Assembly: GCF_036588685.1 (NCBI RefSeq)
Contig: NC_086376.1
Coordinates: 81,137,630-81,201,629 of the forward strand
DNA: 64,000 bases
Source: Mytilus trossulus
Lineage: Eukaryota
Direction of reading: 5' to 3'
The notes below the pieces were generated by a model. The model did not search any database, had not been told where the DNA came from, and saw nothing but the letters and a program-made list of their open reading frames with translations. Positions 10,134 to 47,143 of this stretch are shown in pieces. A program made the translations under genes and the position numbers. Position 1 is the stretch's first letter; each line of letters opens with the position of its first letter.

Positions 10134-13100
10134 TTACGCATTGTCTTTATATTTTCCATTCCATTTCCCAGAACTTCCACCCCATTTTCCTCCACCTCCT
10201 GCCTTTGCCCCACCTGATCCACTACCACCAATACTGCTGCTAAAACTGGAACTAAAACTTGAGCCACTGCTATTAGAACTTGAGCTTGACTTTGCATTTG
10301 ACTTTGACGAACTGGAACCTGTTGCAAAAGCGCTACTATGTGCATTTGATCCACCACCCATCACAGCTCCTCCAGAAGATGGGACACCTCCACTCGAGGA
10401 AATGCCTGTTTTAACGTTAATGCCAGACCCTGTACCGCCAGACTGTGCTAAACTCGACCCAAATGAACTACCACCATCTAAACTGCTAGAACTAGAAAAT
10501 GCCGAAGTACCACCACCTTGGACGCTACCACCAGCCATACCCATGTTTCCTCCAGAAACACCAGATTTTATCTTAATCCCAATATCTTCTCCAACCCGCC
10601 CTCTGATAGACGCAGATTTACTGGAACTACTACCTAACCCAGTGGATCCAGCACCAGTTACACTTCCACCTACTCCACCGCCGATGTTACCAGACATACC
10701 AGAATCATGTGTAGCCTGTAATCCTCCTTGACTGGCACCAGCAGAACCAGAATGTGACAAACTTGATAAAATACCAGAAGAACCACCGACACTGCCACCA
10801 ATCTGCGTACCTCCATTACCAGCGGCCCCGTCGATTCCACCAGAACCACCAACACTGCTGTCAATCTGAGCACCTCCGTTACCAGACACACCCGCATCAG
10901 CGGCACCATTGCTTCCACCAGAACCTCCAGTTTGTATACGCATTCTTATTCCACTTACGCCACTCGTACCACTGCTTGTCTGTGAGGATTTAACATTAAC
11001 ACCTACAGCCCTGTTATTGTTATCTGCACCAGAACTAGAACCAGAAATGCCAATTTTTGTTTGACCACCACTTCCTCCAGATATTCCTATTCTTGTTTCA
11101 CCACCACTTCCACCAGAAATTCCCAATCTTGTTTCACCATTATTGCCGCCAGAAATAGCCATTATTGTTTCACCACCATTTCCATTATCATCATCGTTAC
11201 CATTACCACCAACTGAACCATTTTGATCGTTATCACTACCAGATCTAGAGATACTTCCAGCTAAGTTTCCACTAACTGAGCCAGATGTTCCTCCACCTAT
11301 ACCACTACTGCCACTCATCCCCACTCTGTTTACACCTGAATGGCCAGCATTGACTTTCATACCAATGCCTCCACCGATATTTCCTCCAAATGAGCCACTG
11401 CTACCAACACTGACTTTTGATATACCACCAGTTGATGTACCTACACTAGCACCAGAAATACCACCTGCACCGCCTACACCTATACTACCACTACTTCCAA
11501 TTCCGCCACCAAATCCAGTTCCCATTCCAACGCGTCCTTTAAGTCCAACACTACCACCTTGAGAAAATCCACTCTTCATTTTTATACCAATTCCGCTAGA
11601 TATCGAGTTTGATAACCCACCGCCAGAGCCGATTCCAATTCCACCACTGACACCTGAACTAGACATCGAGTGTGATGAACCACCGCCAGAGCTGAATCCA
11701 ACTCCACCACCTACATGTGAGCTTGACATCGAGCTTGATGAGCCACCGCCAGAGCCGAATCCAATTCCTCCGCTTACACCTGAGCTTGAAATCGAGTTTA
11801 AGCCACTGTCAGTGCTTAATCCAACTCCACCGCCTACACCTAAGCCTGCTCCGCTGCCTATACCAATGTTTGCTGATCCACCACTCGATGAACTGAAGCT
11901 GGATTTGAATTTGCTACTGAAGGATCCACCAATTTTGCCACCAACTCCGCCACCAACTCCACCGCCCAATCCAATGCCGTGGTTTGCATTACCTCCACAG
12001 TCATCATCGCAAGCATGTCTTTTACCAGTAGCTGTAAAACAATTAAGAAAATCAGATGATTTTATCATGACTTTACCGACGGCATTATATATTTTTTCTT
12101 TATGCGAGTTTTATCGTTATCATAATGCAAGTTGTCTTATGTCAATCAGGACCTAATATAACCCCCCCAAAAGAGATATTTTTTTTTAAATCAATTTATT
12201 CCTGAAGGAATATTCTACAAAAATAAAAACATAAGGTACAGCAAATCATGCATGAAAGTTAACAAATTCACATAGTATATGGTTTCATTTCAATGTATCC
12301 GATTGAACGGTGGCAAAGTTTTTTATGCTCCATCTAGGGGTATTATGTCTTTTCGGTCTGTGCGTCTGTTAGCCATACGTCAGTCTTAAGCAACACGACG
12401 GGTGTCACATGTGGAGCAGGATCTGCTTACCCTTCTGGAGCACATGAGATCACCTCTAGTTTTTGGTGGGGTTCGTGTTACTTATTCTTTAGTTTGCTAT
12501 GTTGTGTTATGTGCACTATTGTTTGTCTATTTGTCCTTTTCATTTTTAGCCATGGCGTTGTCAGTTTATTGTCGATTTATGAGTTTGAATGTCCCTCTGG
12601 TATCTTTCGTCCCTCTTTTAAATCCAATCAATAATACACAAATCAAAATAGAAGTTAGACTTGATACATGCACAAAGACTAACAATACATGGTCCTTGTA
12701 GCTTGACTTGGAACATGCACAATTAGATGTAGCCAGATATAGAAGTATTATCTTCTTGTCGTAGTCACAATTCATACTCCCTTTCGATGTTTGACCCGTT
12801 TGTTTATACTTCTAGAAGAACAGAAATTGTTTATTGTTCGAAGGCCACCTTGTTTCCTCTTGTTTGTTCGGAGTTAGAGTTATTAAAAATTTAGTTTTAT
12901 TTGGGTTTCTTTACATATGTTCATAGTGTGGCCTGTCCTTGAAGTTTACACTTGGAATAATCCTTTTGTATCTTCTTGTTTTTCCTCGTATTGATGAAGC
13001 ACTTGAAAATCTATAGCATGTTTTTGTGGTCATAAGATTAAACCAAAGTGACCATTCTCCTGTTCCAAGTTGTCATCAATGTTTTTGGTTTTGTTTTATC

Positions 13101-16332: not shown

Positions 16333-19275
16333 GCCTTGTGTGTTTTGGTTGCTTGTGTTTCTGCACAACAAGAGACATTGAAAAAGAGGTCTGTTGGCGA
16401 CTACAACCCAGACTACAGGCAAGGTAAGGAAATATTACTAGCAGAAGCATAGTTAATGTTGAAGGCCGTACGCTGACCTATAGTTGTTAATTTGTCTGTC
16501 ATTCTCTTATGGAGAGTTGTCTCCCTGGCAATCATACCAAATCTTTTTTTATAACTAATGTGTTATTGTCAAAGTTATCATGAAAGCAGCAATATTAATG
16601 CTTATCCTTTAACTCTTGTATTCCACTTACTTTTACGTGCATTAGTAATTCATTTGTGAAAAATAAGTTAAAACAACAAATTTTAAGAAAATATGTATCC
16701 CCATAATGTTGAAGGCCGTACGGTGACCTATAGTTGTTAATTTCTCTGTCATTTTGGTCTCTTGTGGAGAGTTGTCTCATTGGCAATCATACACATCTTT
16801 TTTTTTTAAACTAATGTGTTATTGTCAAAGTTATCATGAAAGATATGTAAGTGATATTCCTTTAACTCACGTGTTTGACTTGTTGGTTATTTTTACATTC
16901 AATTAGTAATTAATTTGTTAAACAAATCAGTTAAAAACATCAAATTTTAAGATAAAAAGTATCTTCATTGTAGAAAGACTCAAACATCTGAAAATTTCAA
17001 GTATTAACCTACAAACTGTTTCTTTTTCACAGATTACAGGAGAAAGAGATCGGGAGGTCACAAACACGGTAAGAGATACCAATAAGAATTATAGAAAAAA
17101 AATCTGATTTGTTCAATGTAGAAGAAACAAAATAATTTTTAGGTAAATGCAATCAAAACCTTATGGGACTTGATATCAAAATCTTCCAAGGCTGACCACT
17201 ACCTTTATGATACACAAAATATAGTGCATTGAGTGCATTGATCATAATATTCTATACATCCTATCCATGAACATTTCCGGAAATTTGTCGATGTAATTTA
17301 TGCTTAGATATTCAAGGCACAAAATGATGTTACACTTGTCAAGAAAATGACATAACTTTTGCAAGGTGCTTACAAGCACTTTGATTGAATGCTTTATGAT
17401 ATAAGTCGAGATCACTGAAGTTTGGGTTGACTACCATTTGAAATTACATTCACGTCATATCAGTCTTATTGCTCCTTTTGGCAAGGTCACAACACATAAG
17501 ATCTAAAACTTTGTACATGTTAAATAACAGCGATAGTTTGGAAAACATTAAAACAAAATCAATCAGTAAAAATTGAATAAAAAAATGAATAAAAGTGTTT
17601 ATGTTTAGAGATGATAGTGATCACAACCAGCTTTCGTAATTTTCCTAACAAATGCTAATACAAAAAATCCAAAATTGTAGGTCATGGCGGTGGTTCTGGA
17701 TCTGGTCACATCGGAGGTGGAGTTTCTGGTAGCCTTGGGGGCGGACTTAGTGGTAGCCTTGGAGGCGGACTTGGTGGTAGCCTTGGAGGCGGACTTGGTG
17801 GTAGCCTTGGAGGAGGACTTGGCGGTAGCCTTGGAGGAGGACTTGGTGGTAGCCTTGGAGGAGGACTTTCGGGGGGTTTAAGTAGCAATGTTGGAGGAGG
17901 AATTTCTAGTGGACTCGGAGGAGGACTTTCTGGAAGTCTTGGAGGAGGACTGTCCAGTGGACATGGAGGTGGACATGGAGGTGGTGTAAGTGGTGGACTT
18001 TCAAGTGGACTTGGAGGTAGTCTTGGTGGTGGACTTTCCGGTGGTTTAAGTGGCAAAGTTGGAGGTGGTGTTTCTGGAGGTCTTGGAGGTGGTATTTCTG
18101 GAGGACTTGGGGGAGGAATTTCTAGTGGCCTTGGAGGAGGACTTTCTGGTGGTCTTAGAGGAGGAATTTCTGGTGGCAACGCAGGTGGGCTGTCCAGTGG
18201 TTTAAGTGGCAAGGTTAGAGGAGGGGTTTCTAGTGGACTTGGAGGAAGACTTTCTGGTGGTCTTGGAGGAGGAATTTCAGGTGGACATAGAGGTGGTCTG
18301 TCCGGTGGTTTAAGTGGCAAGGTTGGAGGAGGGGTTTCTGGTGGACTTGGTGGAGGAATTTCTGGTGGTCTTGGAGGTGGAATTTCTAGTGGACTTGGAG
18401 AAGGTCTTTCTGGTGGTCTAGGTGGAAGAATTTCTGGAGGACATGGAGGTGGGTTGTCCGGTGGTGTAAGTGGTGGACTTTCCGGTGGAACTGGTGGATC
18501 ATTAGGTGGTAAGATTAAAGGAAGCCTTAGTGGATCAACTGGTGGTGGATTAAGTGGCGGGCTAGGAGGCGGTGTAAGAGGAAATATTGGAGGTGGACTT
18601 GGAGGTGGTCTGTCCGGTGGTGTAAGTGGTGGGCTTTTAGGTGGCCTAAGCGGAGGAACTGGTGGATCATTAGGTGGTAAGATTAAGGGAAGCCTTGGTG
18701 GGTCAACTGGTGGTGGATTAAGTGGCGGGCTAGGAGGCGGTGTAAGAGGAAATATTGGAGGTGGACTTGGAGGTGGTGTTAGTGGTGGACTTGGAGGTGG
18801 CCTTACCGGAGGAACTGGTGGATCTTTAGGGGGTAAGATTAAAGGAAGCCTTAGCGGATCGACTGGTGGTAGCTTAAGTGGTAATCTAGGCGGTGGTGTA
18901 AGTGGTGGACTAGGAGGAAATCTAGGCGGTGGTTTAAGTGGTGGGCTAGGTGGCAGTCTAGGTGGTGGAATCAGCGGTGGGCTAGGCGGTAGTCTAGGCG
19001 GTGGTGTTAGCGGCGGCCTAGGCGGCAGTCTAGGTGGTGGACTTGGAGGTAGTCTAGGTGGTGGACTTGGAGGTAGTCTAGGTGGTGGACTTGGAGGTAG
19101 TCTAGGTGGTGGACTTGGAGGTAGTCTTGGCGGTGGTTTATCTGGAAGCAGTGGTATCAAGATGAAAAGTAGCAGTAGCAGCAGTAGTAGTATATCTTCT
19201 GGAGGAAGAATTGGTGGTGGAAAATATGGAGGAAGTTCTGGAAAATGGGGTGGAAGTTCCGGAAAATGGGACTAA
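16318..19275 (+). CDS. Secreted Gly/Ser/Leu-rich structural protein A2 (578 aa), paralog of A1; coding exons 16318-16423, 17033-17068, 17681-19275
   Basis: MQFIIALCVLVACVSA-QQETLKKR|SVGDYNPDYRQDYRRKR|SGGHKHGHGG..., with the same exon phases as A1. Contains GGLGGSLG / GG[IVL]SGG repeats and ends GGGKYGGSSGKWGGSSGKWD. Confidence 0.9.
16454..16965 (+). repeat. About 250-bp tandem duplication containing a SINE-like 3' fragment (intron 2 of A2)
   Basis: TAATGTTGAAGGCCGTACG... starts at ~16454 and ~16704. The GGAGAGTTGTCTCATTGGCAATCATACC tail also occurs at ~1485 and ~58760. Confidence 0.7.
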
Positions 19276-19425
19276 AAGCATCAGCAGGACTTCTACTTAG
19301 AATATAGTGTCCATTAAATAATTTGCTTCATTCAGGTTTTGTTTTCATTTTGACAGAAAGTTTTGGAAGTGTTTTTGTATCTTCTATTACTATAGTTATC
19401 AATGGTATCAGGATTATAATTTAGT

Positions 19426-19473
19426 ACGCCAGACGCGCGTTTCGTCTACATAACTGAGACTCATCAGTGACGC
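19426..19473 (-). ncRNA. Solo type I hammerhead ribozyme (intact core, 4-nt longer loop II) just downstream of gene A2
   Basis: Minus strand GCGUCA CUGAUGA GUCU-CAGUUAUGU-AGAC GAAA CGCGCGUC UGGCGU, with flanks matching the 7127 unit. Confidence 0.8.
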
Positions 19474-20059
19474 CCATATCAAAATATTTATAAACAGTTT
19501 ACTAACAATTCCAAGTTAACTACCCACAGTCTCAATGATTGGTGTATTATAGGATTTTGGAGAAAAAAAACTGTGGAGGGCTAAAACATCATCCGGTCCC
19601 CAAGTACCAAGGTTTCAATCGGTTTGCAATACACTACTGAAAAATAGAAAGAGAACGTTTTATTTTGGTTCGTATGTGCAAAGGCACCTGTTATCAAATA
19701 TTTGTAAAAAAAAAGTTCTCTTTTATTGATTGCTGGTTGCGAACGTCAAGTGAGTTTTTCAAATTGAAAAACAAATTATCATATCATTTGTATGTACTTT
19801 AATGACATGCGTTAGTAAGTGAATAGTTTGTCATCTGTGTTTCCAATCTTTGTCCTCTTGTTCTTGAAATAACAAATACAACAATGTATCACATACATGC
19901 CGATAAGTCCGTTGCATATCTTTTAAATAGTTATAAATGTGATCATGATTTTAAATCGTTTTCATGTGTTATATAGTCCGTTTTCTCCAATTATAATTCT
20001 TCATATCACAACCTGGATTCCGTAATTTTTTAGGCCGAAATAATTCCAAATGGGGTGAC

Positions 20060-31953: not shown

Positions 31954-33935
31954 TTTTTATACGACCGCAAATTTTGAAAAAAATTTCGTCATATATTGCT
32001 ATCACGTTGGCGTCTGCGTCGTCGTTGTAGTCGTTGTCGTCGTCCGAATACTTTTAGTTTTCGCACTCTAACATAAGCAAAAGTGAATAGAAATCTATGA
32101 AATCTATTAACACAAGGTTTATGACCACAAAAGGAAGGTTGGTATTGATTTGGGAGTTTTGGTCTCAACATTTTAGGAATTAGGGGCCAAAAAGGGCCCA
32201 AATAAGCATTTTCTTGGTTTTCGCGCTATAACTTTAGTTTAGGTTAATAGAAATCTATGAAATTTTGACACAAGGTTTATGACCACAAAAGAAAGGTTGG
32301 GATTGATTTTGAGAGTTTTGGTTTCAACAGTTTAGGAATTAGGGGCCAAAAATGGGCCCAAATAAGCATTATTCTTGGTTTTCGCACAATAACTTTAGTT
32401 TAAGTTAATAGAAATCAATGAAATTTAAACACAATGTTTATGACCACAAAAGGAAGGATGGTATTGATTTTGGGAGTTTAGGTCCCAACAGTTTAGGAAT
32501 TAGGGGCCAAAAAGGGACCCAAATAAGCATTTTTCTTGGTTTTCGCACCATAACTTTAGTATAAGTAAATAGAAATCTATGAAATTTAAACACAAGGTTT
32601 ATGACCATAAAAGGAAGGTTGGTATTGATTTTGGGAGTTTTGGTCCTAACAGTTTAGGAAAAAGGGGCCCAAAGGGTCCAAAATTAAACTTTGTTTGATT
32701 TCATCAAGAATTGAATAATTGGGGTTCTTTGATATGCGGAATCTAACTGTGTATGTAGATTCTTAATTTTTGGTCCCATTTTCAAATTGGTCTACATTAA
32801 GGTCCAAAGGGTCCAAAATTAAACTTAGTTTGATTTTGACAAAAAATTAATCGGTTGGGTTCTTTGATATGCTGAATCTAAAAATGTATTTAGATTCTTG
32901 ATTATTGTCCCAGTTTTCAAGTTGGTCCAAATCGGGGTCCAAAATTAAACATTGTTTGATTTCATTAAAAATTGAATAAATGGGGTTCTTTGATATGCCA
33001 AATCTAACTGTGTACGTAGATTCTTCATTTTTGGTCCTGTTTTCAAATTGGTCTACATTAAAGTCCAAAGGGTCCAAAATTAACTTAGTTTGATTTTAAC
33101 AAAAATTGAAATCTTGGGGTTCTTTGATATGCTGAATCCAAACATGTACTTAGATTTTTGATTATGGGCCCAGTTTTCAGGTTGGTCCAAATCAGGATCT
33201 AAAATATAATTTAAGTATTGTGCAATAGCAAGTCTTTTCAATTGCACAGTATTGCACAATGGCAAGAAATATCTAATTGCACAATATTGTGAAATAGCAA
33301 TATTTTTTTTTAATTAGAGTTATCTTTCTTTGTCCAGAATAGTAAGCAAGAAATATCTAATTGCACAATATTGTGAAATAGCAATATTTTTTTTTAATTG
33401 GAGTTATCTTTCTTTGTCCAGAATCAACTCAAATCTTTGTTATATACAATGTATATTCACTTTTTACTACCAACTGATAAATTAAAATAATCTTTACCAT
33501 TCAGTGATAACAAGCAGTTTTTTTACATCTTAATATTTTATGATGTATTTAAATGAGTAGTTATTGTTGCAAACTCCATTAGAAATTTAATTGAGATTAA
33601 TTTGGAATAAGGGAAAGGGGGATGTGATTAAAAAAAATGGGTTCAATTTTCTCATTTGAAATGAAATTTCATAAATAAAATGAAAATTTCTTCAAACATT
33701 TTTTTGAGAGGATTAATATTCAACAGCATAGTGAATTGCTCTAAGAGAAAACAAAAATTTTAAGTTCATTAGAACACATTCATTCTGTGTCAGAAACCTA
33801 TGCTGTGTCAACTATTAAATCACAATCCAAATTTAGAGCTGAATCCAGCTTGAATGTTGTGTCCATACTTGCCCCAACCGTTCAGGGTTCAACCTCTGCG
33901 GTCGTATAAAGCTACGACCTGCGGAGCATCTGGTT
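31954..33935 (+). mobile_element. Helentron/HINE-like non-autonomous element with internal tandem repeats
   Basis: Subterminal IRs TTTATACGACCGCA / TGCGGTCGTATAAA, a (GTC)n microsatellite and ~150-bp internal repeats. An inverted copy lies at 54583-57388. Confidence 0.8.
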
Positions 33936-34650
33936 TAAAATGCCCTGACATGACCAAATGTCAAATATAAACCAGGAAAAATAACCTACTACAAAACAAA
34001 AAACGAAATGCAAATATAAACACAGCAAACGAGAACCACATGTCTTTGGAGGGATAGACACATACATAATGTGGTGTCTGTTGGGAGCACAGCCACAGGC
34101 TTGTCTCTGAAAAAGATCAACTTCAATGTTTTTATCACAGAGAAGTGCCTAAGAACACAACATAGAAAACAAACTTTTGAAACGTGCCTCACTAATCATA
34201 ACAGTACAAAGCACAAACACTTAAAGACCAAAAGTATCGTAATACTAAGTTATTACAAACTAGTTCCAAATATTAACAAACATGATGTATCTAAGCAAAT
34301 CCCAACACTTAAATCATTATTACCATTTCATAAAGGAACCATACATGTCAACTAAAAATTAAAGAGTTTAAGACAGTTTACTATGTAAGAGTCCACTAAC
34401 ACAGCCGAGGTGTCCATCCTTTCGTTTGCCTTTATTGATGTTTTTATTTACCAAGTAACTTTCTTTAAATCACACGTTTCGTATAGATCATCGTTATCAA
34501 TCGGGACATTATAAAAATATAAACAGACCAATTGTTAATAATGGTAAAAATAGTTTATTTACAAAATTGTTCGGAGAACCGTATAAAAGTGAAATATTTT
34601 AGTCTTTGCACTGTGACATGTAGCAGGGCAAACGACATCTTCAATATTGT

Positions 34651-37600
34651 CTATTTATAAGGTGGTGGATCCATGTGTGATGTGGTCATCATTCCTCCTG
34701 TTGCCTGTCCTCCTGTTGTCATGGGCATTCCGTGTGGTTGTCCATATGTTGACGGAGGTGGGTATGCCGGGTTCCCACCCATCGGTCCACCGGCTGCAGG
34801 ACCGAAAGGAGAGTAGTCAGGTGGCGGGTGTGCATATGGCATCCCACCGTGATGTTGCATTCCACCGGTGTGCACTAAGTTAAAAGCAAAATAAATAATT
34901 GAAATAACTTTATTTATAAATTAAAAATCAGGTTAGTATCAACATGAGATGTTTTTGATCTCAGATATGAAAAAATGTCTTAAAATCTAATATTTTACGA
35001 ATTTCATAAAAAATATTAAAACAATACACAAGTTGTATTCTGTTTAAATTTTTTTTTTAAATATGATTAAACACATCGATATTTGCTTTATCATTGTCGA
35101 CCATACCAATATATACCATGTCGAAAAATACCACTGATACATAAAAGCCGAATTATATCCGTAATTGGTGGGTCGATGATTAATGTTAATTTTAATAAGC
35201 ACATAAGTGTAGTTTAAAAACTTTCTGTAATCGGTAGTATTTTATGAGGAAGCTGACCTTCCTGTATCATACATTACTAAAAAAAAAGTAAAATCACAAA
35301 CTTAACTCCGTGGAAAACTCATCATTTTAAATGTAACTCATCATTATCAAAATGATTGTGGAACTCATTAGGAAACAAGAATACAAACAAGACGATAGAA
35401 CATACCAATAGTTACTATTCCTTGTCGTTGTTGTCTCTGTTTTATTCTTTTTTGTTGATGTTTATGAGTAATGACACAACAAATTATTATTCCGATAACT
35501 ATAGCAACGACCACCACTCCTCCAACAATGGACCCGGCTATTGTTCCAATACTGAAAAAAATAATTAACAGAAGGTCGCTCAACAATACTGACCATAGGC
35601 ATTTAATACGCTTTATTGTAATATATTTGGTTTCCACAAATCCTTAGTCTCGAGCATATATCAGTAGGGTTGTTAAAACTTCGGTTCATGTCATTCAAAC
35701 CCAGATGTTTACAATACCAAATATTTACTCGCTATTTTTTTTTAATGATATTACATTCATCGGTTCAGTATAATATTATATCCAACACAGATTTCAGACA
35801 TTTCAGTCATGTCATATACAGTTCAGCCAATAAATATGTGGCCATACTTTTGTGCTATTCGAAGAATTAAGTTAGTAAAACACCATGGATTTTCTGGAAC
35901 AAGATCGAATTCCATCGTCGGTCAACTCATTTTTGTTAAGAAATGAAAAATATAAAGCCCATGCACAGACTTTTAAAAATATTTGTCAAAATAAGTTTAA
36001 TTTAATCCAAGGGCAGCAAATTATTTTCAAATATCAAGTTAAAGCTGCTGCGAAACTATTGAACAGTTGCTGTTTCGCGATTTTTGTCAATAACATACAT
36101 TATTAAAGATTTTTAATTTAAGATTTCGTTCTTGCCTTTAATATATTTGGTCTTCCCATTAACGACATGTTTATTTTACTAAACCTTATTATTGCTCTTT
36201 GTATACCCATTCATTTTGTAATGCAATATACGAAACAGGGCTTAATACTGAACATCTACTAGTATATACATCCAGCTGCAGAAGCTCTCGTGGCCTGGTC
36301 CAAAATTCATATCTTATACAGTTCATGAGTTTCATTTCCAAAATATATACCATTGGTCTATTTCCCAAATTATCTATGTAGAAATACGTTGAATGAATGC
36401 AAAACATCACAACTATCAAGCTTGAAGTGCTTACCAAAATGTTAAGACTTACTTGCTGCAACATTCTCGACTGTAGTAATAGCCACAGCAACCAGTACCA
36501 CAATAGTAAAACGTTGTACTACTGGATGCATAGCTGTAGTAATAACAGAAATCTCCACACGAACAACCTATAATACAAATAGTACCACAATAGTAAAACG
36601 TTGTACTACTGTACGAATAGCTGTAGTAATAACAGAAATCTCCACACGAACAACCTATAATACAAATAGTACCACAATAGTAAAACGTTGTACTACTGTA
36701 CGAATAGCTGTAGTAATAACAGAAATCTCCACACGAACAACCTATAATACAAATAGTACCACAATAGTAAAACGTTGTACTACTGTACGAATAGCTGTAG
36801 TAATAACAGAAATCTCCACACGAACAACCTATAATACAAATAGTACCACAATAGTAAAACGTTGTACTACTGTACGAATAGCTGTAGTAATAACAGAAAT
36901 CTCCACACGAACAACCTATAATACAAATAGTACCACAATAGTAAAACGTTGTACTACTGAATGCATAGCTGTAGTAATAACAGAAATCTCCTCACGAACA
37001 ACCTATAATACAAATAGTACCATAATAGTAAAACGTTGTACTACTGGATGCATAGCTGTAGTAATAACAGAAATCTACACACGAACAATCTACAATACAA
37101 ATAGTACCACAATAGTAAACGTTGTACTACTGGGTGCATAGCTGTAGTAATAACAGAAATCTCCACACAAACAACCTACAAAACAAATAGTACCACAATA
37201 GTAAAATGTTGTGCTACTGGGTGCATAGCTGTAGTAATAACAAAAATCTCCAAACAAACAACCTACAATACAAATAGTACCACAAAAGTAAAACGTTGTA
37301 CTACTGGATGCATACCTGTAGTAATACCAGAAATCTTCACAAGAACAACCTATAATACAAATAGTACCACATTAGTAAAATGTTGTACTACTGGATGCAT
37401 AGCTGTAGTAATAACAGAAATCTCCACACGAACAGCCTACAATACAAATAGTACCACAATAGTAAAACGTTGTACTACTGGATGCATAGCTGTAGTAATA
37501 ACAGAAATCTCCACAAGAACAACCTATAATACAAATAGTACCACAATAGTAAAACGTTGTACTACTGGATGCATAGCTGTAGTAATAACAGAAATCTCCA

Positions 37601-40600
37601 TACGAACAACCTACAATACAAATAGTACCACAATAGTAAAACGTTGTACTGCTGGATGCAAAGCTGTAGTAATAACAAAATTCTCCACAAGAACAACCTA
37701 CAATACAAATAGTACCACAATAGTAAAACGTTGTGCTACTGGATGCATAGCTGTAGAAATAACAGAAATCTCCACACAAACAACCTACAATACAAATAGT
37801 ACCACAAAAGTAAAACGTTGTGCTACTGGGTGCATAGCTGTAATAATAACAGAAATCTCCACAAGAACAACCTACAAAACAAATAGTACCACAATAGTAA
37901 AACGTTGTACTACTGGATGCATAGCTGTAGTAATAACAAATATCTCCACAAGAACAACCTACAATACAAATAGTACCACAATAGTAAACCGTTGTGCTAC
38001 TGGATGCATAGCTGTAGTAATAACATAAATCTACACACGAACAATCTACAATACAAATAGTACCACAATAGTAAAACGTTGTACTACTGGGTGCATAGCT
38101 GTAGTAATAAAAAAAATCTCCACACGAACAACCTACAATACAAATAGTACAACAATAGTAAAACGTTGTACTACTGGATGCAAAGCTGTAGTAATACCAG
38201 AAATATCCACAAGAACAACCTATAATACAAATAGTACCACAATGGTAAAACGTTGTACTACTGGATGCAAAGCTGTAGTAATAACAGAAATCTCCACACG
38301 AACAACCTATAATACAAATAGTACCACAATAGTAAAACGTTGTACTACTGGATGCAAAGCTGTAGTAATAACAGAAATCTCCACACAAACAACCTACAAT
38401 ACAAATAGTACCACAATAGTAAAACGTTGTACTACTGGATGCATAGCTGTAGTAATAACAGAAATCTTCACAAGAACAACCTATAATACAAATAGTACCA
38501 CAAAAGTAAAACGTTGTACTACTGGATGCAAAGCTGTAGTAATAACAGAAATCTCCACACGAACAACCTATAATACAAATAGTACCACAATAGTAAAACG
38601 TTGTACTACTGGATGCAAAGCTGTAGTAATAACAGAAATCTCCACACAAACAACCTACAATACAAATAGTACCACAATAGTAAAACGTTGTACTACTGGA
38701 TGCAAAGCTGTAGTAATAACAGAAATCTCCACACAAACAACCTACAATACAAATAGTACCACAATAGTAAAACGTTGTACTACTGAATGTATAGCTGTAG
38801 TAATAACAGAAATCTCCACACGAACAACCTACAATACAAATAGTACCACAATAGTAAAACGTTGTACTACTGGATGCAAAGCTGTAGTAATAACAGAAAT
38901 CTCCACACGAACAACCTATAATACAAATAGTACCACAATAGTAAAACGTTGTACTACTGGATGCATAGCTGTAGTATTAACAGAAATCTCCACAAGAACA
39001 ACCTACAATACAAATAGTACCACAATAGTAAAACGTTGTGCTACTGGATGCATAGCTGTAGTAATAACAGAAATCTCCACACAAACAACCTACAATACAA
39101 ATAGTACCACAATAGTAAAACGTTGTACTACTGAATGTATAGCTGTAGTAATAACAGAAATCTCCACACAAACAACCTACAATACAAATAGTACCACAAT
39201 AGTAAAACGTTGTACTACTGGATGCATAGCTGTAGTAATAACAGAAATCTCCACACAAACAACCTACAATACAAATAGTACCACAATAGTAAAACGTTGT
39301 ACTACTGGATGCATAGCTGTAGTAATAACAGAAATCTTCACACAAACAACCTACAATACAAATAGTACCACAATAGTAAAACGTTGTGCTACTGGATGCA
39401 TAGCTGTAGTAATAACAGAAATCTCCACACAAACAACCTACAAAACAATTAGTACCACAATAGTAAAACGTTGTACTACTGGATGCATAGCTGTAGTAAT
39501 AACAGAAATCTCCACACGAACAACCTATAATACAAATAGTACCACAATAGTAAAACGTTGTACTACTGTACGAATAGCTGTAGTAATAACAGAAATCTCC
39601 ACACGAACAACCTATAATACAAATAGTACCACAATAGTAAAACGTTGTACTACTGTACGAATAGCTGTAGTAATAACAGAAATCTCCACACGAACAACCT
39701 ATAATACAAATAGTACCACAATAGTAAAACGTTGTACTACTGAATGCATAGCTGTAGTAATAACAGAAATCTCCTCACGAACAACCTACAAAACAATTAG
39801 TACCACAATAGTAAAACGTTGTACTACTGGATGCATACCTGTAGTAATACCAGAAATCTTCACAAGAACAACCTACAATACAAATAGTACCACAATAGTA
39901 AAACGTTGTGCTACTGGATGCATAGCTGTAGTAATAACAGAAATCTCCACACAAACAACCTACAATACAAATAGTACCACAATAGTAAAACGTTGTGCTA
40001 CTGGATGCATAGCTGTAGTAATAACAGAAATCTCCACACAAACAACCTACAAAACAATTAGTACCACAATAGTAAAACGTTGTACTACTGGATGCATACC
40101 TGTAGTAATACCAGAAATCTTCACAAGAACAACCTATAATACAAATAGTACCACATTAGTAAAATGTTGTTCTACTGGATGCATACCTGTAGTAATACCA
40201 GAAATCTTCGCAAGAACAACCTATAATACAAATAGTACCGCAATAGTAAAATGTTGTACTACTGGATGCATAGCTGTAGTAATAACAGAAATCTCCACAC
40301 GAACAACCTATAATACAAATAGTACCACAATAGTAAAACGTTGTACTACTATACGAATAGCTGTAGTAATAACAGAAATCTCCACACACGAACAGCCTAC
40401 AAAACAAATAGTACCACAATAGTAAAACGTTGTACTACTGGATGCATAGCTGTAGTAATAACAGAAATCTTCACAAGAACAGCCTACAATAAAAATAGTA
40501 CCACAATAGTAAAACGTTGTACTACTGTACGAATAGCTGTAGTAATAACAGAAATCTCCACACACGAACAGCCTACAAAACAAATAGTACCACAATAGTA

Positions 40601-43600
40601 AAACGTTGTACTACTGGATGCATACCTGTAGTAATACCAGAAATCTTCGCAAGAACAACCTATAATACAAATAGTACCACAATAGTAAAATGTTGTACTA
40701 CTGGATGCATAGCTGTAGTAATAACAGAAATCTCCACGCGAACAACCTATAATACAAATAGTACCACAATAGTAAAACGTTGTACTACTGTACGAATAGC
40801 TGTAGTAATAACAGAAATCTCCACACACGAACAGCCTACAAAACAAATAGTACCACAATAGTAAAACGTTGTACTACTGGATGCATAGCTGTAGTAATAA
40901 CAGAAATCTTCACAAGAACAGCCTACAATACAAATAGTACCACAATAGTAAAACGTTGTACTACTGGATGCATAGCTGTAGTAATAACAGAAATCTCCAC
41001 ACGAACAGCCTACAATACAAATAGTACCACAATAGTAAAACGTTGTACTACTGGATGCATAGCTGTAGTAATAACAGAAATCTTCACACGAACAGCCTAC
41101 AATACAAATAGTACCACAATAGTAAAACGTTGTACTACTGGATGCATAGCTGTAGTAATAACAGAAATCTCCACAAGAACAACCTACAATACAAATAGTA
41201 CCACAATAGTAAAACGTTGTGCTACTGGATGCATAGCTGTAGTAATAACAGAAATCTCCACACAAACAACCTACAAAACAAATAGTAACACAATAGTAAA
41301 ATGTTGTGCTACTGGGTGCATAGCTGTAATAATAACATAAATTTACACACGAACAACCTACAATACAAATAGTACCACAATAGTAAAACGTTGTACTACT
41401 GGATGCATAGCTGTAGTAATAACAGAAATCTCCACACAAACAACCTACAATATAAATAGTACCACAATAGTAAAACGTTGTTCTACTGGATGCAAAGCTG
41501 TAGTAATAACAAAAATATCCACAAGAACAACCTACAATACAAATAGTATCACAATAGTAAAACGTTGTGCTACTGGATGCATAGCTGTAGTAATAACAGA
41601 AATCTCCACACAAACAACCTACAATACAAATAGTACCACAATAGTAAAACGTTGTACTACTGGATGCATAGCTGTAGTAATAACAGAAATCTTCACAAGA
41701 ACAACCTATAATACAAATAGTACCACAAAAGTAAAACGTTGTACTACTGGATGCAAAGCTGTAGTAATAACAGAAATCTCCACACGAACAACCTATAATA
41801 CAAATAGTACCACAATAGTAAAACGTTGTACTACTGGATGCAAAGCTGTAGTAATAACAGAAATCTCCACACAAACAACCTACAATACAAATAGTACCAC
41901 AATAGTAAAACGTTGTACTACTGGATGCATAGCTGTAGTAATAACAGAAATCTTCACAAGAACAACCTATAATACAAATAGTACCACAAAAGTAAAACGT
42001 TGTACTACTGGATGCAAAGCTGTAGTAATAACAGAAATCTCCACACGAACAACCTATAATACAAATAGTACCACAATAGTAAAACGTTGTACTACTGGAT
42101 GCAAAGCTGTAGTAATAACAGAAATCTCCACACAAACAACCTACAATACAAATAGTACCACAATAGTAAAACGTTGTACTACTGGATGCAAAGCTGTAGT
42201 AATAACAGAAATCTCCACACAAACAACCTACAATACAAATAGTACCACAATAGTAAAACGTTGTACTACTGAATGTATAGCTGTAGTAATAACAGAAATC
42301 TCCACACGAACAACCTACAATACAAATAGTACCACAATAGTAAAACGTTGTACTACTGGATGCAAAGCTGTAGTAATAACAGAAATCTCCACACGAACAA
42401 CCTATAATACAAATAGTACCACAATAGTAAAACGTTGTACTACTGGATGCATAGCTGTAGTATTAACAGAAATCTCCACAAGAACAACCTACAATACAAA
42501 TAGTACCACAATAGTAAAATGTTGTTCTACTGGATGCATACCTGTAGTAATACCAGAAATCTTCGCAAGAACAACCTATAATACAAATAGTACCACAATA
42601 GTAAAATGTTGTACTACTGGATGCATAGCTGTAGTAATAACAGAAATCTCCACACAAACAACCTACAATACAAATAGTACCACAATAGTAAAACGTTGTA
42701 CTACTGAATGTATAGCTGTAGTAATAACAGAAATCTCCACACGAACAACCTACAATACAAATAGTACCACAATAGTAAAACGTTGTACTACTGGATGCAT
42801 AGCTGTAGTAATAACAGAAATCTCCACACAAACAACCTACAATACAAATAGTACCACAATAGTAAAACGTTGTGCTACTGGATGCATAGCTGTAGTAATA
42901 ACAGAAATCTCCACACAAACAACCTACAAAACAAATAGTACCACAATAGTAAAACGTTGTACTACTGGATGCATAGCTGTAGTAATAACAGAAATCTCCA
43001 CAAGAACAACCTACAATACAAATATTACCACAATAGTAAAACGTTGTGCTACTGGATGCATAGCTGTAGTAATAACAGAAATCTCCACACAAACAACCTA
43101 CAATAAAAATAGTATCACAATAGTAAAACGTTGTTCTACTGGATGCATAGCTGTAGTAATAACAGAAATCTCCACAAGAACAACCTACAATACAAATAGT
43201 ACCACAATAGTAAAACGTTGTGCTACTGGATGCATAGCTGTAGTAATAACAGAAATCTCCACAAGAACAACCTATAAAACAAATAGTAACACAATAGTAA
43301 AACGTTGTGCTACTGGATGCATAGCTGTAGTAATAACAGAAATCTCCACACAAACAACCTACAAAACAAATAGTACCACAATAGTAAAACGTTGTACTAC
43401 TGAATGTATAGCTGTAGTAATAACAGAAATCTCCACATAAACAACCTACAATACAAATAGTACCACAATAGTTAAACGTTGTGCTACTGGATGCATAGCT
43501 GTAGTAATAACAGAAATCTCCACACAAACAACCTACAATACAAATAGTACCACAAAAGTAAAACGTTGTGCTACTGGATGCATAGCTGTAGTAATAACAG

Positions 43601-46600
43601 AAATCTCCACACAAACAACCTACAATACAAATAGTACCACAATAGTAAAACGTTGTGCTACTGGATGCATAGCTGTAGTAATAACAGAAATCTCCACACA
43701 AACAACCTACAATACAAATAGTAATACAATAGTAAAACGTTGTGCTACTGGATGCATAGCTGTAGTAATAACAGAAATCTCCACACAAACAACCTACAAA
43801 ACAAATAGTACCACAATAGTAAAACGTTGTACTACTGGATGCATAGCTGTAGTAATAACAGAAATCTCCACACAAACAACCTATAAAACAAATAGTACCA
43901 CAATAGTAAAACGTTGTACTACTGGGTGCATAGCTGTAATAATAACATAAATCTACACACGAACAACCTACAATACAAATAGTACCACAATAGTAAAACG
44001 TTGTACTACTGGATGCATAGCTGTAGTAATAACAGAAATCTCCACACAAACAACCTACAATACAAATAGTACCACAATAGTAAAACGTTGTACTACTGGA
44101 TGCATAGCTGTAGTAATAACAGAAATCTCCACACAAACAACCTACAATACAAATAGTACCACAATAGTAAAACGTTGTACTACTGGATGCATAGCTGTAG
44201 TAATAACAGAAATCTCCACACAAACAACCTACAATACAAATAGTAATACAATAGTAAAACGTTGTGCTACTGGATGCATAGCTGTAGTAATAACAGAAAT
44301 CTCCACACAAACAACCTACAAAACAAATAGTACCACAATAGTAAAACGTTGTACTACTGGATGCATAGCTGTAGTAATAACAGAAATCTCCACACAAACA
44401 ACCTACAATACAAATAGTATCACAATAGTAAAACGTTGTTCTACTGGATGCATACCTGTAGTAATACCAGAAATATCCACAAGAACAACCTACAATACAA
44501 ATAGTACCACAATAGTAAAATGTTGTACTACTGGATGCATACCTGTAGTAATACCAGAAATCTTCGCAAGAACAACCTATAATACAAATAGTACCGCAAT
44601 AGTAAAATGTTGTACTACTGGATGCATAGCTGTAGTAATAACAGAAATCTCCACACGAACAACCTATAATACAAATAGTACCACAATAGTAAAACGTTGT
44701 ACTACTATACGAATAGCTGTAGTAATAACAGAAATCTCCACACACGAACAGCCTACAAAACAAATAGTACCACAATAGTAAAACGTTGTACTACTGGATG
44801 CATAGCTGTAGTAATAACAGAAATCTTCACAAGAACAGCCTACAATAAAAATAGTACCACAATAGTAAAACGTTGTACTACTGTACGAATAGCTGTAGTA
44901 ATAACAGAAATCTCCACACACGAACAGCCTACAAAACAAATAGTACCACAATAGTAAAACGTTGTACTACTGGATGCATACCTGTAGTAATACCAGAAAT
45001 CTTCGCAAGAACAACCTATAATACAAATAGTACCACAATAGTAAAATGTTGTACTACTGGATGCATAGCTGTAGTAATAACAGAAATCTCCACGCGAACA
45101 ACCTATAATACAAATAGTACCACAATAGTAAAACGTTGTACTACTGTACGAATAGCTGTAGTAATAACAGAAATCTCCACACACGAACAGCCTACAAAAC
45201 AAATAGTACCACAATAGTAAAACGTTGTACTACTGGATGCATAGCTGTAGTAATAACAGAAATCTTCACAAGAACAGCCTACAATACAAATAGTACCACA
45301 ATAGTAAAACGTTGTACTACTGGATGCATAGCTGTAGTAATAACAGAAATCTCCACACGAACAGCCTACAATACAAATAGTACCACAATAGTAAAACGTT
45401 GTACTACTGGATGCATAGCTGTAGTAATAACAGAAATCTTCACACGAACAGCCTACAATACAAATAGTACCACAATAGTAAAACGTTGTACTACTGGATG
45501 CATAGCTGTAGTAATAACAGAAATCTCCACAAGAACAACCTACAATACAAATAGTACCACAATAGTAAAACGTTGTGCTACTGGATGCATAGCTGTAGTA
45601 ATAACAGAAATCTCCACACAAACAACCTACAAAACAAATAGTAACACAATAGTAAAATGTTGTGCTACTGGGTGCATAGCTGTAATAATAACATAAATCT
45701 ACACACGAACAACCTACAATACAAATAGTACCACAATAGTAAAACGTTGTACTACTGGATGCATAGCTGTAGTAATAACAGAAATCTCCACACAAACAAC
45801 CTACAATATAAATAGTACCACAATAGTAAAACGTTGTTCTACTGGATGCAAAGCTGTAGTAATAACAAAAATATCCACAAGAACAACCTACAATACAAAT
45901 AGTATCACAATAGTAAAACGTTGTGCTACTGGATGCATAGCTGTAGTAATAACAGAAATCTCCACAAGAACAACCTACAATACAAATAGTACCACAATAG
46001 TAAAACGTTGTACTACTGTACGAATAGCTGTAGTAATAACAGAAATCTCCACAAGAACAACCTATAATACAAATAGTATCACAATAGTAAAACGTTGTTC
46101 TACTTGATGCAAAGCTGTAGTAATAACAAAAATCTCCACAAGAACAACCTACAATACAAATAGTACCACAATAGTAAAACGTTGTGCTACTGGATGCATA
46201 GCTGTAGTAATAACAGAAATCTCCACAAAAACAACCTACAATACAAATGGTACCACAATAGTAAAACGTTGTGCTACTGGATGCATAGCTGTAGTAATAA
46301 CAGAAATCTCCACACGAACAACCTACAATACAAACATTCGAAACCAACTGATATAGTGAGATAATAACGCCCATAAACTATTTGCCACTGGAAGTAAGGT
46401 AAGCAACAATGAATGAAACAAAATTATAATCACAATAACTTTTAGTTTAATGTAACTGTTTGTGGTGGTTTTTTTAGGTGTGTATTTAAGTATACCTTTC
46501 TTTTTTAGGAGTAAAAATACCGATTAACGATTTTACAGGAGAGGTTCGACATACAGTTTTCTAGGTTTTTTTTTATATAATATGTAGATGCCAACACAGG

Positions 46601-47143
46601 CACTTGTCTCTGTTTTTTTTTTTTTTTTTTTTTTTATCTATGTTCCTGTATATTGACGGTGGATGCCATTGATCCAACTATATACTAGTATAAATCCACA
46701 AGATTTTAAAAGACGTGATTTTAGGAACCTTTTAGTATCCATATTGACTTCAACAGTGAGCAAAACCCATGCATTATATTCAGCTATATATAAAAGACCC
46801 CAAAATGACAAAATGAGAAACGATTCGAACAAAAACATCAACTTTGAATTATAACAAAACCCAAATGCGAAGCCATCGATAATTAAATTTTACTGCATAT
46901 ATATAACAGGCCCATAAATTTGCGAGAGGATCATACATATCGTGGCGGGGTTAAACATTCACATTGCTTGTTTGTTTTGTTTTGTAAGTTATCTCGATTT
47001 AAATAAGTCAACGGATGATTGTTCCTAAGAGGATAACGTTAAAGTTGAAAGATAAATTTTCAAAAATTAAGTTACAAACTGTACTTACCAGTAATAAAAT
47101 AAAGTAAGACTAAAAGAGATATTCGGAATAGTTCTAGCGCCAT
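34651..47143 (-). CDS. CYYR1/Shisa-like single-pass membrane protein (minimal form 179 aa); exons 47143-47089, 36567-36453, 35551-35406, 34874-34651
   Basis: Signal peptide MALELFRISLLVLLYFITG, Cys/Tyr ectodomain CSCGDFCYYYSYASSSTTFYYCGTGCCGYYYSRECC, TM IAGSIVGGVVVVAIVIGIIICCVI, basic stretch, and Pro-rich tail with PPDY and PPPY motifs. All junctions are GT-AG and phase-compatible. Which acceptor in the array is used is unknown. Confidence 0.85.
36494..46334 (-). repeat. About 113 x 87-bp tandem array = 3' end of intron 1 plus first 74 nt of exon 2 of the CYYR1/Shisa-like gene
   Basis: Unit (minus strand): (a)tttgtattgtag|GT TGT TCG TGT GGA GAT TTC ... TAT TGT GGT ACT. First acceptor at 46322, last at 36567; the 9755-bp span equals 112 x 87 + 11 net indel. 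Confidence 0.95.

What the first reader, a model, noticed from the sequence alone, without database searches (positions are those of the whole stretch)
36494..46334. About 113 tandem 'splice acceptor + variant Cys/Tyr module' units inside a Shisa/CYYR1-like receptor gene
Seen: this apparent satellite is the amplified intron-1/exon-2 boundary of a real gene. Every 87-bp unit I inspected keeps a T-rich tract plus TAG acceptor, phase-matched to the signal-peptide exon (47143-47089). The 87-bp length (29 codons) lets the intronic piece read through as TICIV. Units vary at defined residues (S/L, G/E/V, D/Y, C/W, S/R, YAS/FAS/YSY/YTF/YAP). Only the last unit continues into GCCGYYYSRECC, the TM and the PPxY tail. 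Inference: acceptor choice could tune ectodomain length and sequence. The five proximal acceptors (36567, 36654, 36741, 36828, 36915) give full-length receptors with 1-5 modules. More distal acceptors hit stops (first TGA at 36992-36994) and would give secreted or NMD forms. This would be receptor diversification by mass tandem 3' splice sites. The alternative is a neutral minisatellite expansion that cripples this allele.
Basis: partly seen in the sequence, partly recalled or inferred. Interest (0 to 1): 0.9.

Follow-up and report, generated by a model that had tools for sequence, protein, structure and literature searches.

The report
Splice-acceptor minisatellite in mussel CYYR1-like gene
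An intron of a mussel membrane-adaptor gene holds 113 tandem copies of its own splice acceptor plus exon start, but the copies look like neutrally drifting decoys ("mirage" minisatellite), not a device for varying the receptor.

Summary
Window 36494-46334 (minus strand) is a 113-unit, 87-bp array. Each unit is the last 12-13 nt of intron 1, with its TAG acceptor, plus the first 74 nt of exon 2 of a small Shisa-like/CYYR1-like gene.

The proposed function, ectodomain tuning by acceptor choice, is not supported:
- The units evolve as neutral DNA: 13 synonymous, 38 nonsynonymous and 3 stop changes, against 12.2, 38.7 and 3.1 expected.
- Thirteen units carry frameshifts or stops, and these were copied along in block duplications.
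- AG invariance is unremarkable, because 45 of 87 columns never vary.
- A unit holds only 2 of the family's 6 conserved cysteines.
- The Mytilus coruscus and M. californianus orthologs (174 and 179 aa), and nearly all of 116 homologs, have one module.
- No multi-module protein of 207-660 aa was found among 5.8 billion sequences.
- In the one informative RNA-like run, from a sibling species, exon 2 starts exactly at the last acceptor and no contig lies on the nine neighbouring units (104-112).

This matches the known "mirage" class of intron-exon-boundary minisatellites described in amphioxus. The scan has already noted many such arrays elsewhere in this genome.

Caveats: there is no RNA from the window's own species, and contigs miss rare isoforms.

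The parts
36494..46334 (-). Minisatellite of 113 units (87 bp; six of 89 bp, one of 86 bp). Each unit is about 12-13 nt of the intron-1 3' end with the TAG acceptor, plus the first 74 nt of exon 2.
47089..47143 (-). Coding part of exon 1: ATG plus signal peptide MALELFRISLLVLLYFIT(G), with donor G|gtaagt in phase 1.
   Evidence: It is 89% identical to the N-termini of orthologs P0001 and P0002. It was not seen in RNA here.
46335..47088 (-). Native, non-repeated part of intron 1 (754 bp). With the array, intron 1 is 10,521 bp.
36568..36569 (-). AG of the last (proximal) acceptor. It is the one joined to an upstream exon in the RNA-like contigs.
   Evidence: record 17 lies on 36453-36569 and has a loose end there. 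One search shows the upstream exon ends in ...CAG, so the junction is at 36568|36567.
36453..36567 (-). Exon 2. It encodes (G)CSCGDFCYYYSYASSSTTFYYCGTGCCGYYYSRECCS, the whole C*C*CC*CC Cys-rich domain. The donor AA|gtaagt is at 36452.
   Evidence: (joint 35551/36453)
35406..35551 (-). Exon 3: transmembrane helix plus basic juxtamembrane stretch.
   Evidence: joints on both sides. It is 98-100% identical to P0001 and P0003.
34651..34874 (-). Coding part of exon 4: Pro/Gly-rich tail with PPDY and PPPY motifs, stop TAG at 34651-34653. The 3' UTR continues to at least 34403.
   Evidence: (record 10)
36569..36916 (-). Units 109-112, four identical intact copies. Their acceptors are the only other ones that could give a TM-containing product.
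   Evidence: 87/87 identical
36917..37003 (-). Unit 108, with in-frame TGA at 36992-36994. It is identical to unit 76 (39700-39786).
   Evidence: units 76-78 match 108-110 at 261/261
44578..45975 (-). Block of units 5-20. It is duplicated 4,356 bp away as units 55-70 (40222-41619), 1395/1398 identical, and includes the three 89-bp frameshifted units.
41794..42489 (-). Block of units 45-52. It is duplicated as units 85-92 (38308-39003), 696/696 identical, and includes a TAA-stop unit.
37091..37176 (-). Unit 106, 86 bp (1-bp deletion, frameshift).

Best explanation
This is a 'mirage' minisatellite, a tandem amplification of an intron-exon boundary.

Inferred origin: an 87-bp piece spanning the intron-1 acceptor and the first 74 nt of exon 2 of a single-copy mussel CYYR1-like (Shisa-like/STMC6) gene was duplicated in tandem. 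It then expanded to 113 copies by unequal exchange and multi-unit block duplication. This lengthened intron 1 from about 0.77 kb to 10.5 kb.

Inferred splicing: only the last copy is followed, 115 nt downstream, by a strong donor (AA|gtaagt). It is therefore the copy recognised as an exon. The 112 upstream copies stay intronic as silent decoy acceptors and drift neutrally.

Shown: the resulting gene product is the conserved single-module protein, made of a signal peptide, a C*C*CC*CC domain, one TM helix and a PPxY tail. By analogy with human CYYR1, it probably acts as an adaptor for NEDD4-family E3 ligases.

Also shown: the anatomy of the array, its neutral substitution pattern, the single-module orthologs, and use of the last acceptor in transcripts of a sibling species.

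Still inferred: exclusive use of the last acceptor in the window's own species, and the exon-definition reason for it.
For: Anatomy:
- The unit consists of the intron tail plus the exon start, and the array ends exactly at the real exon 2.
- The repeat is unique to this locus in the 1.3-Gb genome, and the gene has no paralog.

Neutral evolution:
- There are 54 distinct substitutions: 13 synonymous, 38 nonsynonymous and 3 stop, against 12.2, 38.7 and 3.1 expected for random mutation (binomial p=0.75).
- Variable columns by codon position are 11, 14 and 17.
- 45 of 87 columns are invariant, so the invariant AG is not special.

Disabling mutations:
- 13 of 113 units are disabled, and these units are copied within blocks that are 1395/1398, 696/696 and 261/261 identical.

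Comparison with relatives:
- Orthologs P0001 (M. coruscus, 174 aa) and P0002 (M. californianus, 179 aa) have one module. The window's exons are 89-98% identical to them.
- Nearly all of 116 homologs are 100-200 aa long.
- The six near-invariant Cys are C26, C41, C45, C46, C54 and C55. A unit carries only the first two.
- No multi-module protein of 207-660 aa exists in the database.

Transcripts:
- Run X6 has contigs on exons 2, 3 and 4 only, with GT-AG joints at 34874/35406 and 35551/36453. Its exon 2 ends at the last acceptor, and depth is zero on units 104-112.

Splice signals:
- No GT in the unit matches more than 6 of 9 donor consensus positions, against 8/9 for the real exon 1 and exon 2 donors. 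The unit has no poly(A) signal.

Precedent:
- Amphioxus Adh3 and globin 'mirages' do not disturb regular splicing (PMC3087553).
Against: - The RNA evidence is one run of assembled contigs from a sibling organism: 12 substitutions and 11 gap letters in 472 nt of exon 4 and 3' UTR. Whether that organism has the array is unknown.
- Contigs drop rare isoforms.
- In that run exon 2 is joined to an exon of a dispersed repeat, not to exon 1. The exon1-exon2 junction was therefore never observed directly.
- The 87-bp unit is in frame and five acceptors would give intact proteins, so minor isoforms are physically possible.
Confidence: 0.78

Rival explanations
1. One reading: the four intact neighbouring acceptors (units 109-112), and perhaps others, are used at some level. 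This would give receptors with 2-5 N-terminal Cys/Tyr segments, or truncated/NMD forms, so the array would tune ectodomain length and sequence.
For: All 113 units keep TAG in the right phase. Units 109-113 are open and in frame, because 87 = 29 codons. Each unit carries a plausible branch-point-like TTTAC about 27 nt upstream of its AG (read directly from the sequence).
Against: - The substitution pattern is neutral, and stops and frameshifts have spread.
- AG conservation is no better than that of half of all columns.
- A unit holds 2 of the 6 conserved Cys. With the intron-derived Cys it adds an odd five cysteines.
- The orthologs and the wider family are single-module.
- No multi-module protein of 207-660 aa was found in the database.
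- No RNA contig lies on units 104-112.
Confidence: 0.08
2. The first acceptor (unit 1, 46323) is used. This would make a roughly 424-aa secreted poly-Cys/Tyr protein that ends at the frameshift in unit 14, with no TM domain (the reading of scan note s1-827239).
For: The frame from exon 1 through units 1-13 is open (377 aa) and then shifts in the 89-bp unit 14. Unit 1 keeps the native intron context upstream of it.
Against: - Such an exon would have to run through the whole array to the donor at 36452, or end at a poly(A) site. The unit has no strong donor and no poly(A) signal.
- Run X6 has no contig on the proximal units.
- No protein of 207-660 aa resembling the 377-aa frame exists among 5.8 billion sequences.
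- Evolution is neutral.
Confidence: 0.03
3. The decoy array has a regulatory effect without changing the protein. The 112 U2AF-binding decoys and the 14-fold longer intron would slow or lower productive splicing, or the array would donate sequence to the expressed exon by exchange within the last unit.
For: The first 75 nt of the expressed exon 2, with the 12 intron nt before them, are 100% identical to array unit 79. Exon 2 also differs from the orthologs (YASSS against YSYGG/NSYGG), while units 4, 77-78 and 109-112 keep YSY. So the array and the exon share a history of homogenisation.
Against: There are no expression data for alleles with different copy numbers. The pattern is equally what passive concerted evolution would give.
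Confidence: 0.09
4. Assembly artefact: the array is much shorter in reality and was inflated by the assembler.
For: Long arrays of near-identical units are error-prone to assemble. Two blocks are near-perfect duplicates.
Against: The units carry 60 different translated variants in a structured higher-order pattern. There are no Ns in the window. An independent individual's short-read contigs give 35-40 times the flank depth on array words.
Confidence: 0.02

Closest known systems
'Mirage' minisatellites of amphioxus (Adh3; globin genes BflGb6 and BflGb9)
   Same: They are tandem head-to-tail duplications whose unit spans an intron-exon boundary and carries the splice signal. The authentic copy sits at the edge of the array. 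Regular splicing is reported as undisturbed, and they show concerted evolution and unequal exchange (PMC3087553).
   Different: This case is in a mollusc and is far larger: 113 units and 9.8 kb, against 3-6 units in BflGb6. The unit is in frame (87 = 29 codons). Length polymorphism and somatic instability were not tested here.
Other exon-boundary minisatellites noted by this scan in the same genome (for example a PHGDH acceptor array of about 32 copies, an MPPE1 donor array of 76 copies, and a TRAPPC1 donor array of about 120)
   Same: The architecture is the same: exon edge plus splice site, amplified into the intron. For PHGDH, the earlier follow-up likewise reports transcripts joining only to the genuine copy (these are AI notes that I did not check).
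   Different: They are in different genes with different units. Here the unit encodes part of a Cys-rich ectodomain, which invited the receptor-diversity reading.
CYYR1 / Shisa-like (STMC6) single-pass adaptors
   Same: The host gene has a signal peptide, a short C*C*CC*CC ectodomain, one TM helix containing Cys, and a Pro-rich tail with PPxY motifs. Human CYYR1 binds the WW domains of WWP1, WWP2 and ITCH through its PPxY motifs (PMC11399591; PMC5578492).
   Different: The mussel protein and its orthologs do not reach any Pfam threshold. It has two canonical PPxY motifs, not three. Its function is untested.
Tandem alternative 3' splice sites (NAGNAG / wobble splicing) and mutually exclusive exon arrays (Dscam type)
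   Same: Both have several candidate acceptors in tandem in one gene.
   Different: In those systems more than one site is demonstrably used and the variants are under selection. Here only one site is seen in use, the units lack donors, and they evolve neutrally.

Membership tests
Mirage (intron-exon boundary) minisatellite | Head-to-tail tandem array inside a gene | tested here: met
   113 units, period 87, 93% matches
Mirage (intron-exon boundary) minisatellite | The unit spans an intron-exon boundary of the host gene and includes the splice signal, and the authentic boundary lies at the array's edge | tested here: met
   The unit is TTTGTATTRTAG plus 74 nt of exon 2. The native intron reads the same 12 nt before unit 1, and unit 113 continues into the unique part of exon 2.
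Mirage (intron-exon boundary) minisatellite | Regular splicing uses the authentic copy, and the repeats are not part of the mRNA | tested here: inconclusive
   In run X6, exon 2 begins at the last acceptor and no contig lies on units 104-112. But these are contigs from a sibling organism, only the nine proximal neighbouring units were laid, and the upstream partner was a repeat-borne exon.
Mirage (intron-exon boundary) minisatellite | Concerted evolution and turnover by unequal exchange | tested here: met
   Block duplications at offsets of 50 and 40 units, four identical adjacent units, and units 76-78 identical to 108-110
Mirage (intron-exon boundary) minisatellite | Length polymorphism between haplotypes | not testable with these tools
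   Also, contigs cannot size an array.
Shisa-like (STMC6) superfamily, CYYR1-like | Six cysteines in a C*C*CC*CC pattern just after a signal peptide | tested here: met
   Exon 2 has C8, C23, C27, C28, C36 and C37. The near-invariant columns in 58 homologs are C26, C41, C45, C46, C54 and C55. The pattern is as stated in PMC5578492.
Shisa-like (STMC6) superfamily, CYYR1-like | Single transmembrane helix followed by a Pro-rich tail with PPxY motifs | tested here: met
   Exon 3 has a hydrophobic run, IGTIAGSIVGGVVVVAIVIGIIICCVI. Exon 4 has PPDY and PPPY.
Shisa-like (STMC6) superfamily, CYYR1-like | Match to Pfam CYYR1 (PF10873), Shisa_N (PF13908) or WBP-1 (PF11669) above the gathering score | tested here: not met
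   For orthologs P0001 and P0002, WBP-1 scores 18.5-18.9 bits against a cut-off of 28.1, and there is no CYYR1 or Shisa hit at E<=1. Window exon 3 scores 10.9 bits on CYYR1 against 31. The joined window protein was not searched, by rule.
Shisa-like (STMC6) superfamily, CYYR1-like | Sequence homologs that are themselves family members (transitive homology) | tested here: met
   Of 58 phmmer homologs, 9 match CYYR1 (best E 3.5e-13), 8 match WBP-1 and 3 match Shisa_N. [quoted passage not shown]
Regulated alternative 3' splice-site array / variable-exon cassette system | More than one acceptor used in transcripts | tested here: not met
   Only the junction at 36568|36567 is seen. Depth on the proximal units is zero in the RNA-like run. 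The power of this test is limited.
Regulated alternative 3' splice-site array / variable-exon cassette system | Variant units kept open and under purifying or diversifying selection | tested here: not met
   Synonymous/nonsynonymous/stop counts are 13/38/3 against 12.2/38.7/3.1 expected. 13 units are disabled.
Regulated alternative 3' splice-site array / variable-exon cassette system | Each unit is a complete exon with its own donor (Dscam type) | tested here: not met
   The best in-unit GT matches 6 of 9 consensus positions and overlaps the acceptor. The real exon 1 and exon 2 donors match 8 of 9.

The most novel reading that the evidence does not exclude
A minority of transcripts in some tissue or allele use the four intact neighbouring acceptors (units 109-112). 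Exchange within the last unit also feeds array variants into the expressed exon. On this reading the minisatellite acts as a slow generator of ectodomain length and sequence variants of a CYYR1-like adaptor.
Probability: 0.07. Interest if true: 0.65.

Novelty: new member of a known kind. Interest (0 to 1): 0.3.

Why it matters
As a receptor-diversification system it would have been remarkable, but the evidence points to a passive "mirage" minisatellite.

Its remaining value is as a natural experiment in splice-site choice. The gene carries 112 near-perfect, in-frame decoy acceptors upstream of the real one, yet still appears to make the conserved product. That fits exon definition by the downstream donor.

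It is also a practical warning for annotation: the M. galloprovincialis model of this gene is partial and starts only at exon 3.

With the many similar arrays the scan has noted in this genome, it adds to a picture that mussel genomes are unusually rich in exon-boundary minisatellites. That genome-wide bias may itself deserve a study.

Tried and rejected
I laid the part with fewer copies that the tool suggested. That used the only call, so exon 1 and the distal units were never laid.
- I searched for the 27-nt loose end of the X6 contig in the window (0 matches at up to 3 mismatches). I also searched 100 kb upstream in the assembly and found none. Genome-wide it is a dispersed repeat.
- I considered a spliced leader (trans-splicing) as the source of that 5' piece and set it aside. 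The copies are embedded in dispersed elements of at least 2.2 kb that are 99-100% identical, on all chromosomes and both strands. A paper search found no report of SL trans-splicing in molluscs.
The orthologous loci of M. coruscus and M. californianus could therefore not be fetched to see whether they carry the array.
- An exact scan of metagenome contigs for the unit-unit junction found nothing.
- Pfam on the separate exons and on the 377-aa open frame of units 1-13 gave nothing above threshold.
- The search for homologous proteins with the 377-aa frame gave no hit.
- Pei & Grishin 2012 (PMC3295595) is not held. Its content is cited only through PMC5578492 and PMC11399591.
- The joined (spliced) protein of the window gene was not built or searched. 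All comparisons were made exon by exon, by reference.


Full report
**1. Observation**

Tandem Repeats Finder reports a single array at 36494-46334: period 87, 113.0 copies, 93% matches, score 16893. The region also stands out by AT skew of about +0.32 and GC skew of about -0.2.

On the minus strand I cut the array into 113 units. Of these, 105 are 87 bp, six are 89 bp (units 14, 17, 19, 64, 67, 69) and one is 86 bp (unit 106).

Every unit ends in TTTGTATTRTAG. The same 12 nt precede unit 1 in the native intron. Unit 113 runs on into the unique sequence encoding GCCGYYYSRECCS and the donor AA|gtaagt at 36452.

Read from the G of TAG, the consensus unit encodes GCSCGDFCYYYSYASSSTTFYYCGTICIV.

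The predicted exon 1 (47143-47089, MALELFRISLLVLLYFIT + G|gtaagt) is in phase 1 and matches each acceptor. Units 109-113 are intact. Unit 108 has TGA at 36992-36994, as stated.

Six units have in-frame stops (45, 71, 76, 85, 103, 108) and seven have indels. The array is thus cut into open stretches of at most 775 aa.

The repeat is found nowhere else in the 1.3-Gb assembly, and the gene has no paralog there.

**2. The host gene**

The gene lies on the minus strand:
- Exon 1 is 47143-47089.
- Exon 2 is 36567-36453.
- Exon 3 is 35551-35406 and encodes the TM helix.
- Exon 4 is 34874-34651 and encodes a Pro/Gly-rich tail with PPDY and PPPY.

A search with five proximal units plus the exon 2 end found one protein cluster. 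[quoted passage not shown]

Both proteins read signal peptide, then one module, then GCCGYYYSRECCSN, then TM, then PPxY tail. The four window exons, aligned one by one, are 89-98% identical to them.

An M. galloprovincialis model (VDI30874.1) is 'partial' and starts exactly at exon 3. It is 100% and 96% identical to window exons 3 and 4. The window therefore comes from a Mytilus of that species complex. An earlier scan note names M. trossulus, which I did not verify.

All searches were exon by exon or used the database orthologs.

**3. Family**

The orthologs pass no Pfam threshold. WBP-1 scores 18.5-18.9 bits against a cut-off of 28.1, and there is no CYYR1 or Shisa hit.

phmmer of P0001 against 1.84 billion representatives gives 116 hits, nearly all 100-200 aa long. 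Of 58 that I aligned, 9 match Pfam CYYR1 (best E 3.5e-13), 8 match WBP-1 and 3 match Shisa_N. The scallop relative is named 'shisa-4-like'.

The near-invariant columns are six cysteines: C26, C41, C45, C46, C54 and C55. This is the C*C*CC*CC pattern given as the hallmark of Shisa-like (STMC6) proteins, which include CYYR1, WBP1, VOPP1 and TMEM92 (PMC5578492).

Human CYYR1 binds the WW domains of WWP1, WWP2 and ITCH through its PPxY motifs and drives WWP1 degradation (PMC11399591). 'Shisa/CYYR1-like' is therefore a fair description at superfamily level, by pattern and by transitive homology. It is not a Pfam-level membership.

This matters for the finding. The array unit carries only the first two of the six conserved cysteines, so it is a fragment of the domain and not a module that could fold alone. 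Read through, each extra unit would add five cysteines, one of them from intron-derived sequence.

**4. Do the units look selected?**

They do not.
- Among the 105 units of 87 bp, 45 of 87 columns never vary, so an invariant AG is unremarkable.
- Variable columns by codon position number 11, 14 and 17.
- The 54 distinct substitutions split into 13 synonymous, 38 nonsynonymous and 3 stop. Random mutation with the observed transition/transversion mix predicts 12.2, 38.7 and 3.1 (binomial p=0.75).
- Conserved-Cys codons are hit as well. Cys8 became Trp in 10 units.
- Disabling changes are carried along in block duplications. Units 5-20 match units 55-70 at 1395/1398, including three 2-bp-insertion units. 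Units 45-52 match 85-92 at 696/696, including a TAA unit. Units 76-78 match 108-110 at 261/261, including the TGA unit. Units 109-112 are identical to each other.

This is the signature of minisatellite turnover by unequal exchange, with no constraint on coding capacity.

**5. Transcripts**

The run search returned DNA runs of organism A, which hold 0.82-0.95 of the words. It also returned RNA-like runs, mainly of organism B.

The part 34400-37263, covering units 104-113, was laid.

Run X6 is labelled 'RNA?' by the tool. It behaves as RNA: its contigs lie only on exons 4, 3 and 2, with joints 34874/35406 and 35551/36453 that skip CT..AC, which is GT..AG on the gene strand. It has no contig on the introns and none on units 104-112.

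Its exon 2 contig (depth 59.5) ends at 36569 and continues for 27 nt of foreign sequence. That sequence is absent from the window. It occurs 271 times (at up to 2 mismatches) across the assembly, inside dispersed copies of at least 2.2 kb that are 99-100% identical. There it is followed by ...CAG|gtaaaa, a donor.

The contig is therefore a true splice of a repeat-borne exon onto exon 2, at exactly the last acceptor (36568|36567). No copy of that repeat lies in the window or in the 100 kb upstream in the assembly. It is probably an insertion private to that sample or species. Its frame has an upstream TGA and no ATG, so it would not supply a signal peptide.

These results show three things. The predicted exon 2, 3 and 4 structure is real. 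The last acceptor is functional. The mRNA carries one module.

They do not show three other things. The run is from a sibling organism: 12 substitutions and 11 gap letters in 472 nt of exon 4 and 3' UTR, and 1 difference in 117 nt of exon 2. Whether that organism has the array is unknown. Contigs also miss rare isoforms, and the exon1-exon2 junction itself was not seen.

Further negative evidence comes from the protein search. No protein of 207-660 aa resembling the 377-aa open frame of units 1-13 exists among 5.8 billion sequences.

**6. Is the array real?**

DNA run X1 is from a different individual, since it differs from the window at many intron positions. It gives array words a depth of 186-218, against about 5 on the flanks. 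It also has a contig running from the unique intron 2 and exon 2 sequence into unit 113.

Together with the structured higher-order pattern and the absence of Ns, an assembly artefact is unlikely.

**7. Mechanism**

The array arose by tandem duplication across the acceptor and grew by unequal exchange. This is inferred from the block structure.

Only the last copy is followed by a strong donor, which matches 8 of 9 consensus positions and lies 115 nt downstream. Inside the unit, the best GT matches 6 of 9 and overlaps the acceptor, and there is no poly(A) signal. Exon definition would therefore pick the last copy and leave the other 112 intronic. This step is inferred, but it is consistent and with the amphioxus precedent.

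**8. Comparison with what is known**

[quoted passage not shown] They have 3-6 units in BflGb6, show concerted evolution and length instability, and RT-PCR shows regular splicing (PMC3087553).

I got the term from an earlier scan note (s1-818517) and then checked the paper. The scan's notes list many more exon-boundary arrays in this same genome, including PHGDH with about 32 acceptor copies, MPPE1 with 76 donor copies and TRAPPC1 with about 120. These are unchecked AI notes. I use them only as context, but they indicate that the scan has found this kind of thing before on other DNA of this genome.

**9. Verdict**

The functional part, mass alternative acceptors tuning a receptor, is not supported.

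This is a very large mollusc example of a known kind of minisatellite. It sits in a CYYR1-like adaptor gene whose normal single-module product is preserved. Interest is modest. It is a natural test of 3' splice-site choice with 112 decoys, a cause of annotation failure, and one more case in a genome that seems rich in such arrays.

Noticed in passing
window 36567-36569 (junction); repeat copies at L022-L025 around position 1500: In RNA-like run X6, exon 2 is spliced to an exon carried by a young dispersed repeat. That repeat has 271 copies at up to 2 mismatches, in copies of at least 2.2 kb that are 99-100% identical, and the exon ends ...CAG|gtaaaa. No copy lies in the window or 100 kb upstream in the assembly. 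It looks like a repeat-initiated chimeric transcript from a polymorphic insertion, and it lacks the signal-peptide exon.
   Followed up: partly
window 35406-35551 and P0003: The M. galloprovincialis model VDI30874.1 is 'partial' and starts exactly at exon 3. Exons 1-2 may have been lost to annotation or assembly at the array.
   Followed up: partly
window 36482-36568 compared with units 4, 77-78 and 109-112: The expressed exon reads YASSS where the M. coruscus and M. californianus orthologs read YSYGG and NSYGG. Some array units keep YSY. The first 75 nt of the exon are 100% identical to unit 79. Array and exon have therefore been homogenised together.
   Followed up: partly
window 10001-12000 and 18001-20000: Two GC-richer stretches (0.45-0.46 against about 0.32) have strong opposite GC skew (-0.39 and +0.44). 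They coincide with the head-to-head Gly-rich protein genes noted by other first-stage notes.
   Followed up: no
window 32100-33250 (minus strand view): There is a run of similar dispersed-repeat copies (recurring motifs such as ...ttggaccc... and ...aaaatcaatacc...). It begins about 1.2 kb beyond the furthest transcript contig seen for the gene (34403).
   Followed up: no
window 46612-46640: A long A run (more than 20 A) lies inside the native part of intron 1. It is possibly the tail of an old retroposed element.
   Followed up: no
same genome, other loci (scan notes): The scan's notebook lists 38 notes with 'minisatellite' and 'exon' in this genome. Several are exon-boundary arrays. A genome-wide excess has been suggested but was not tested here.
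   Followed up: no
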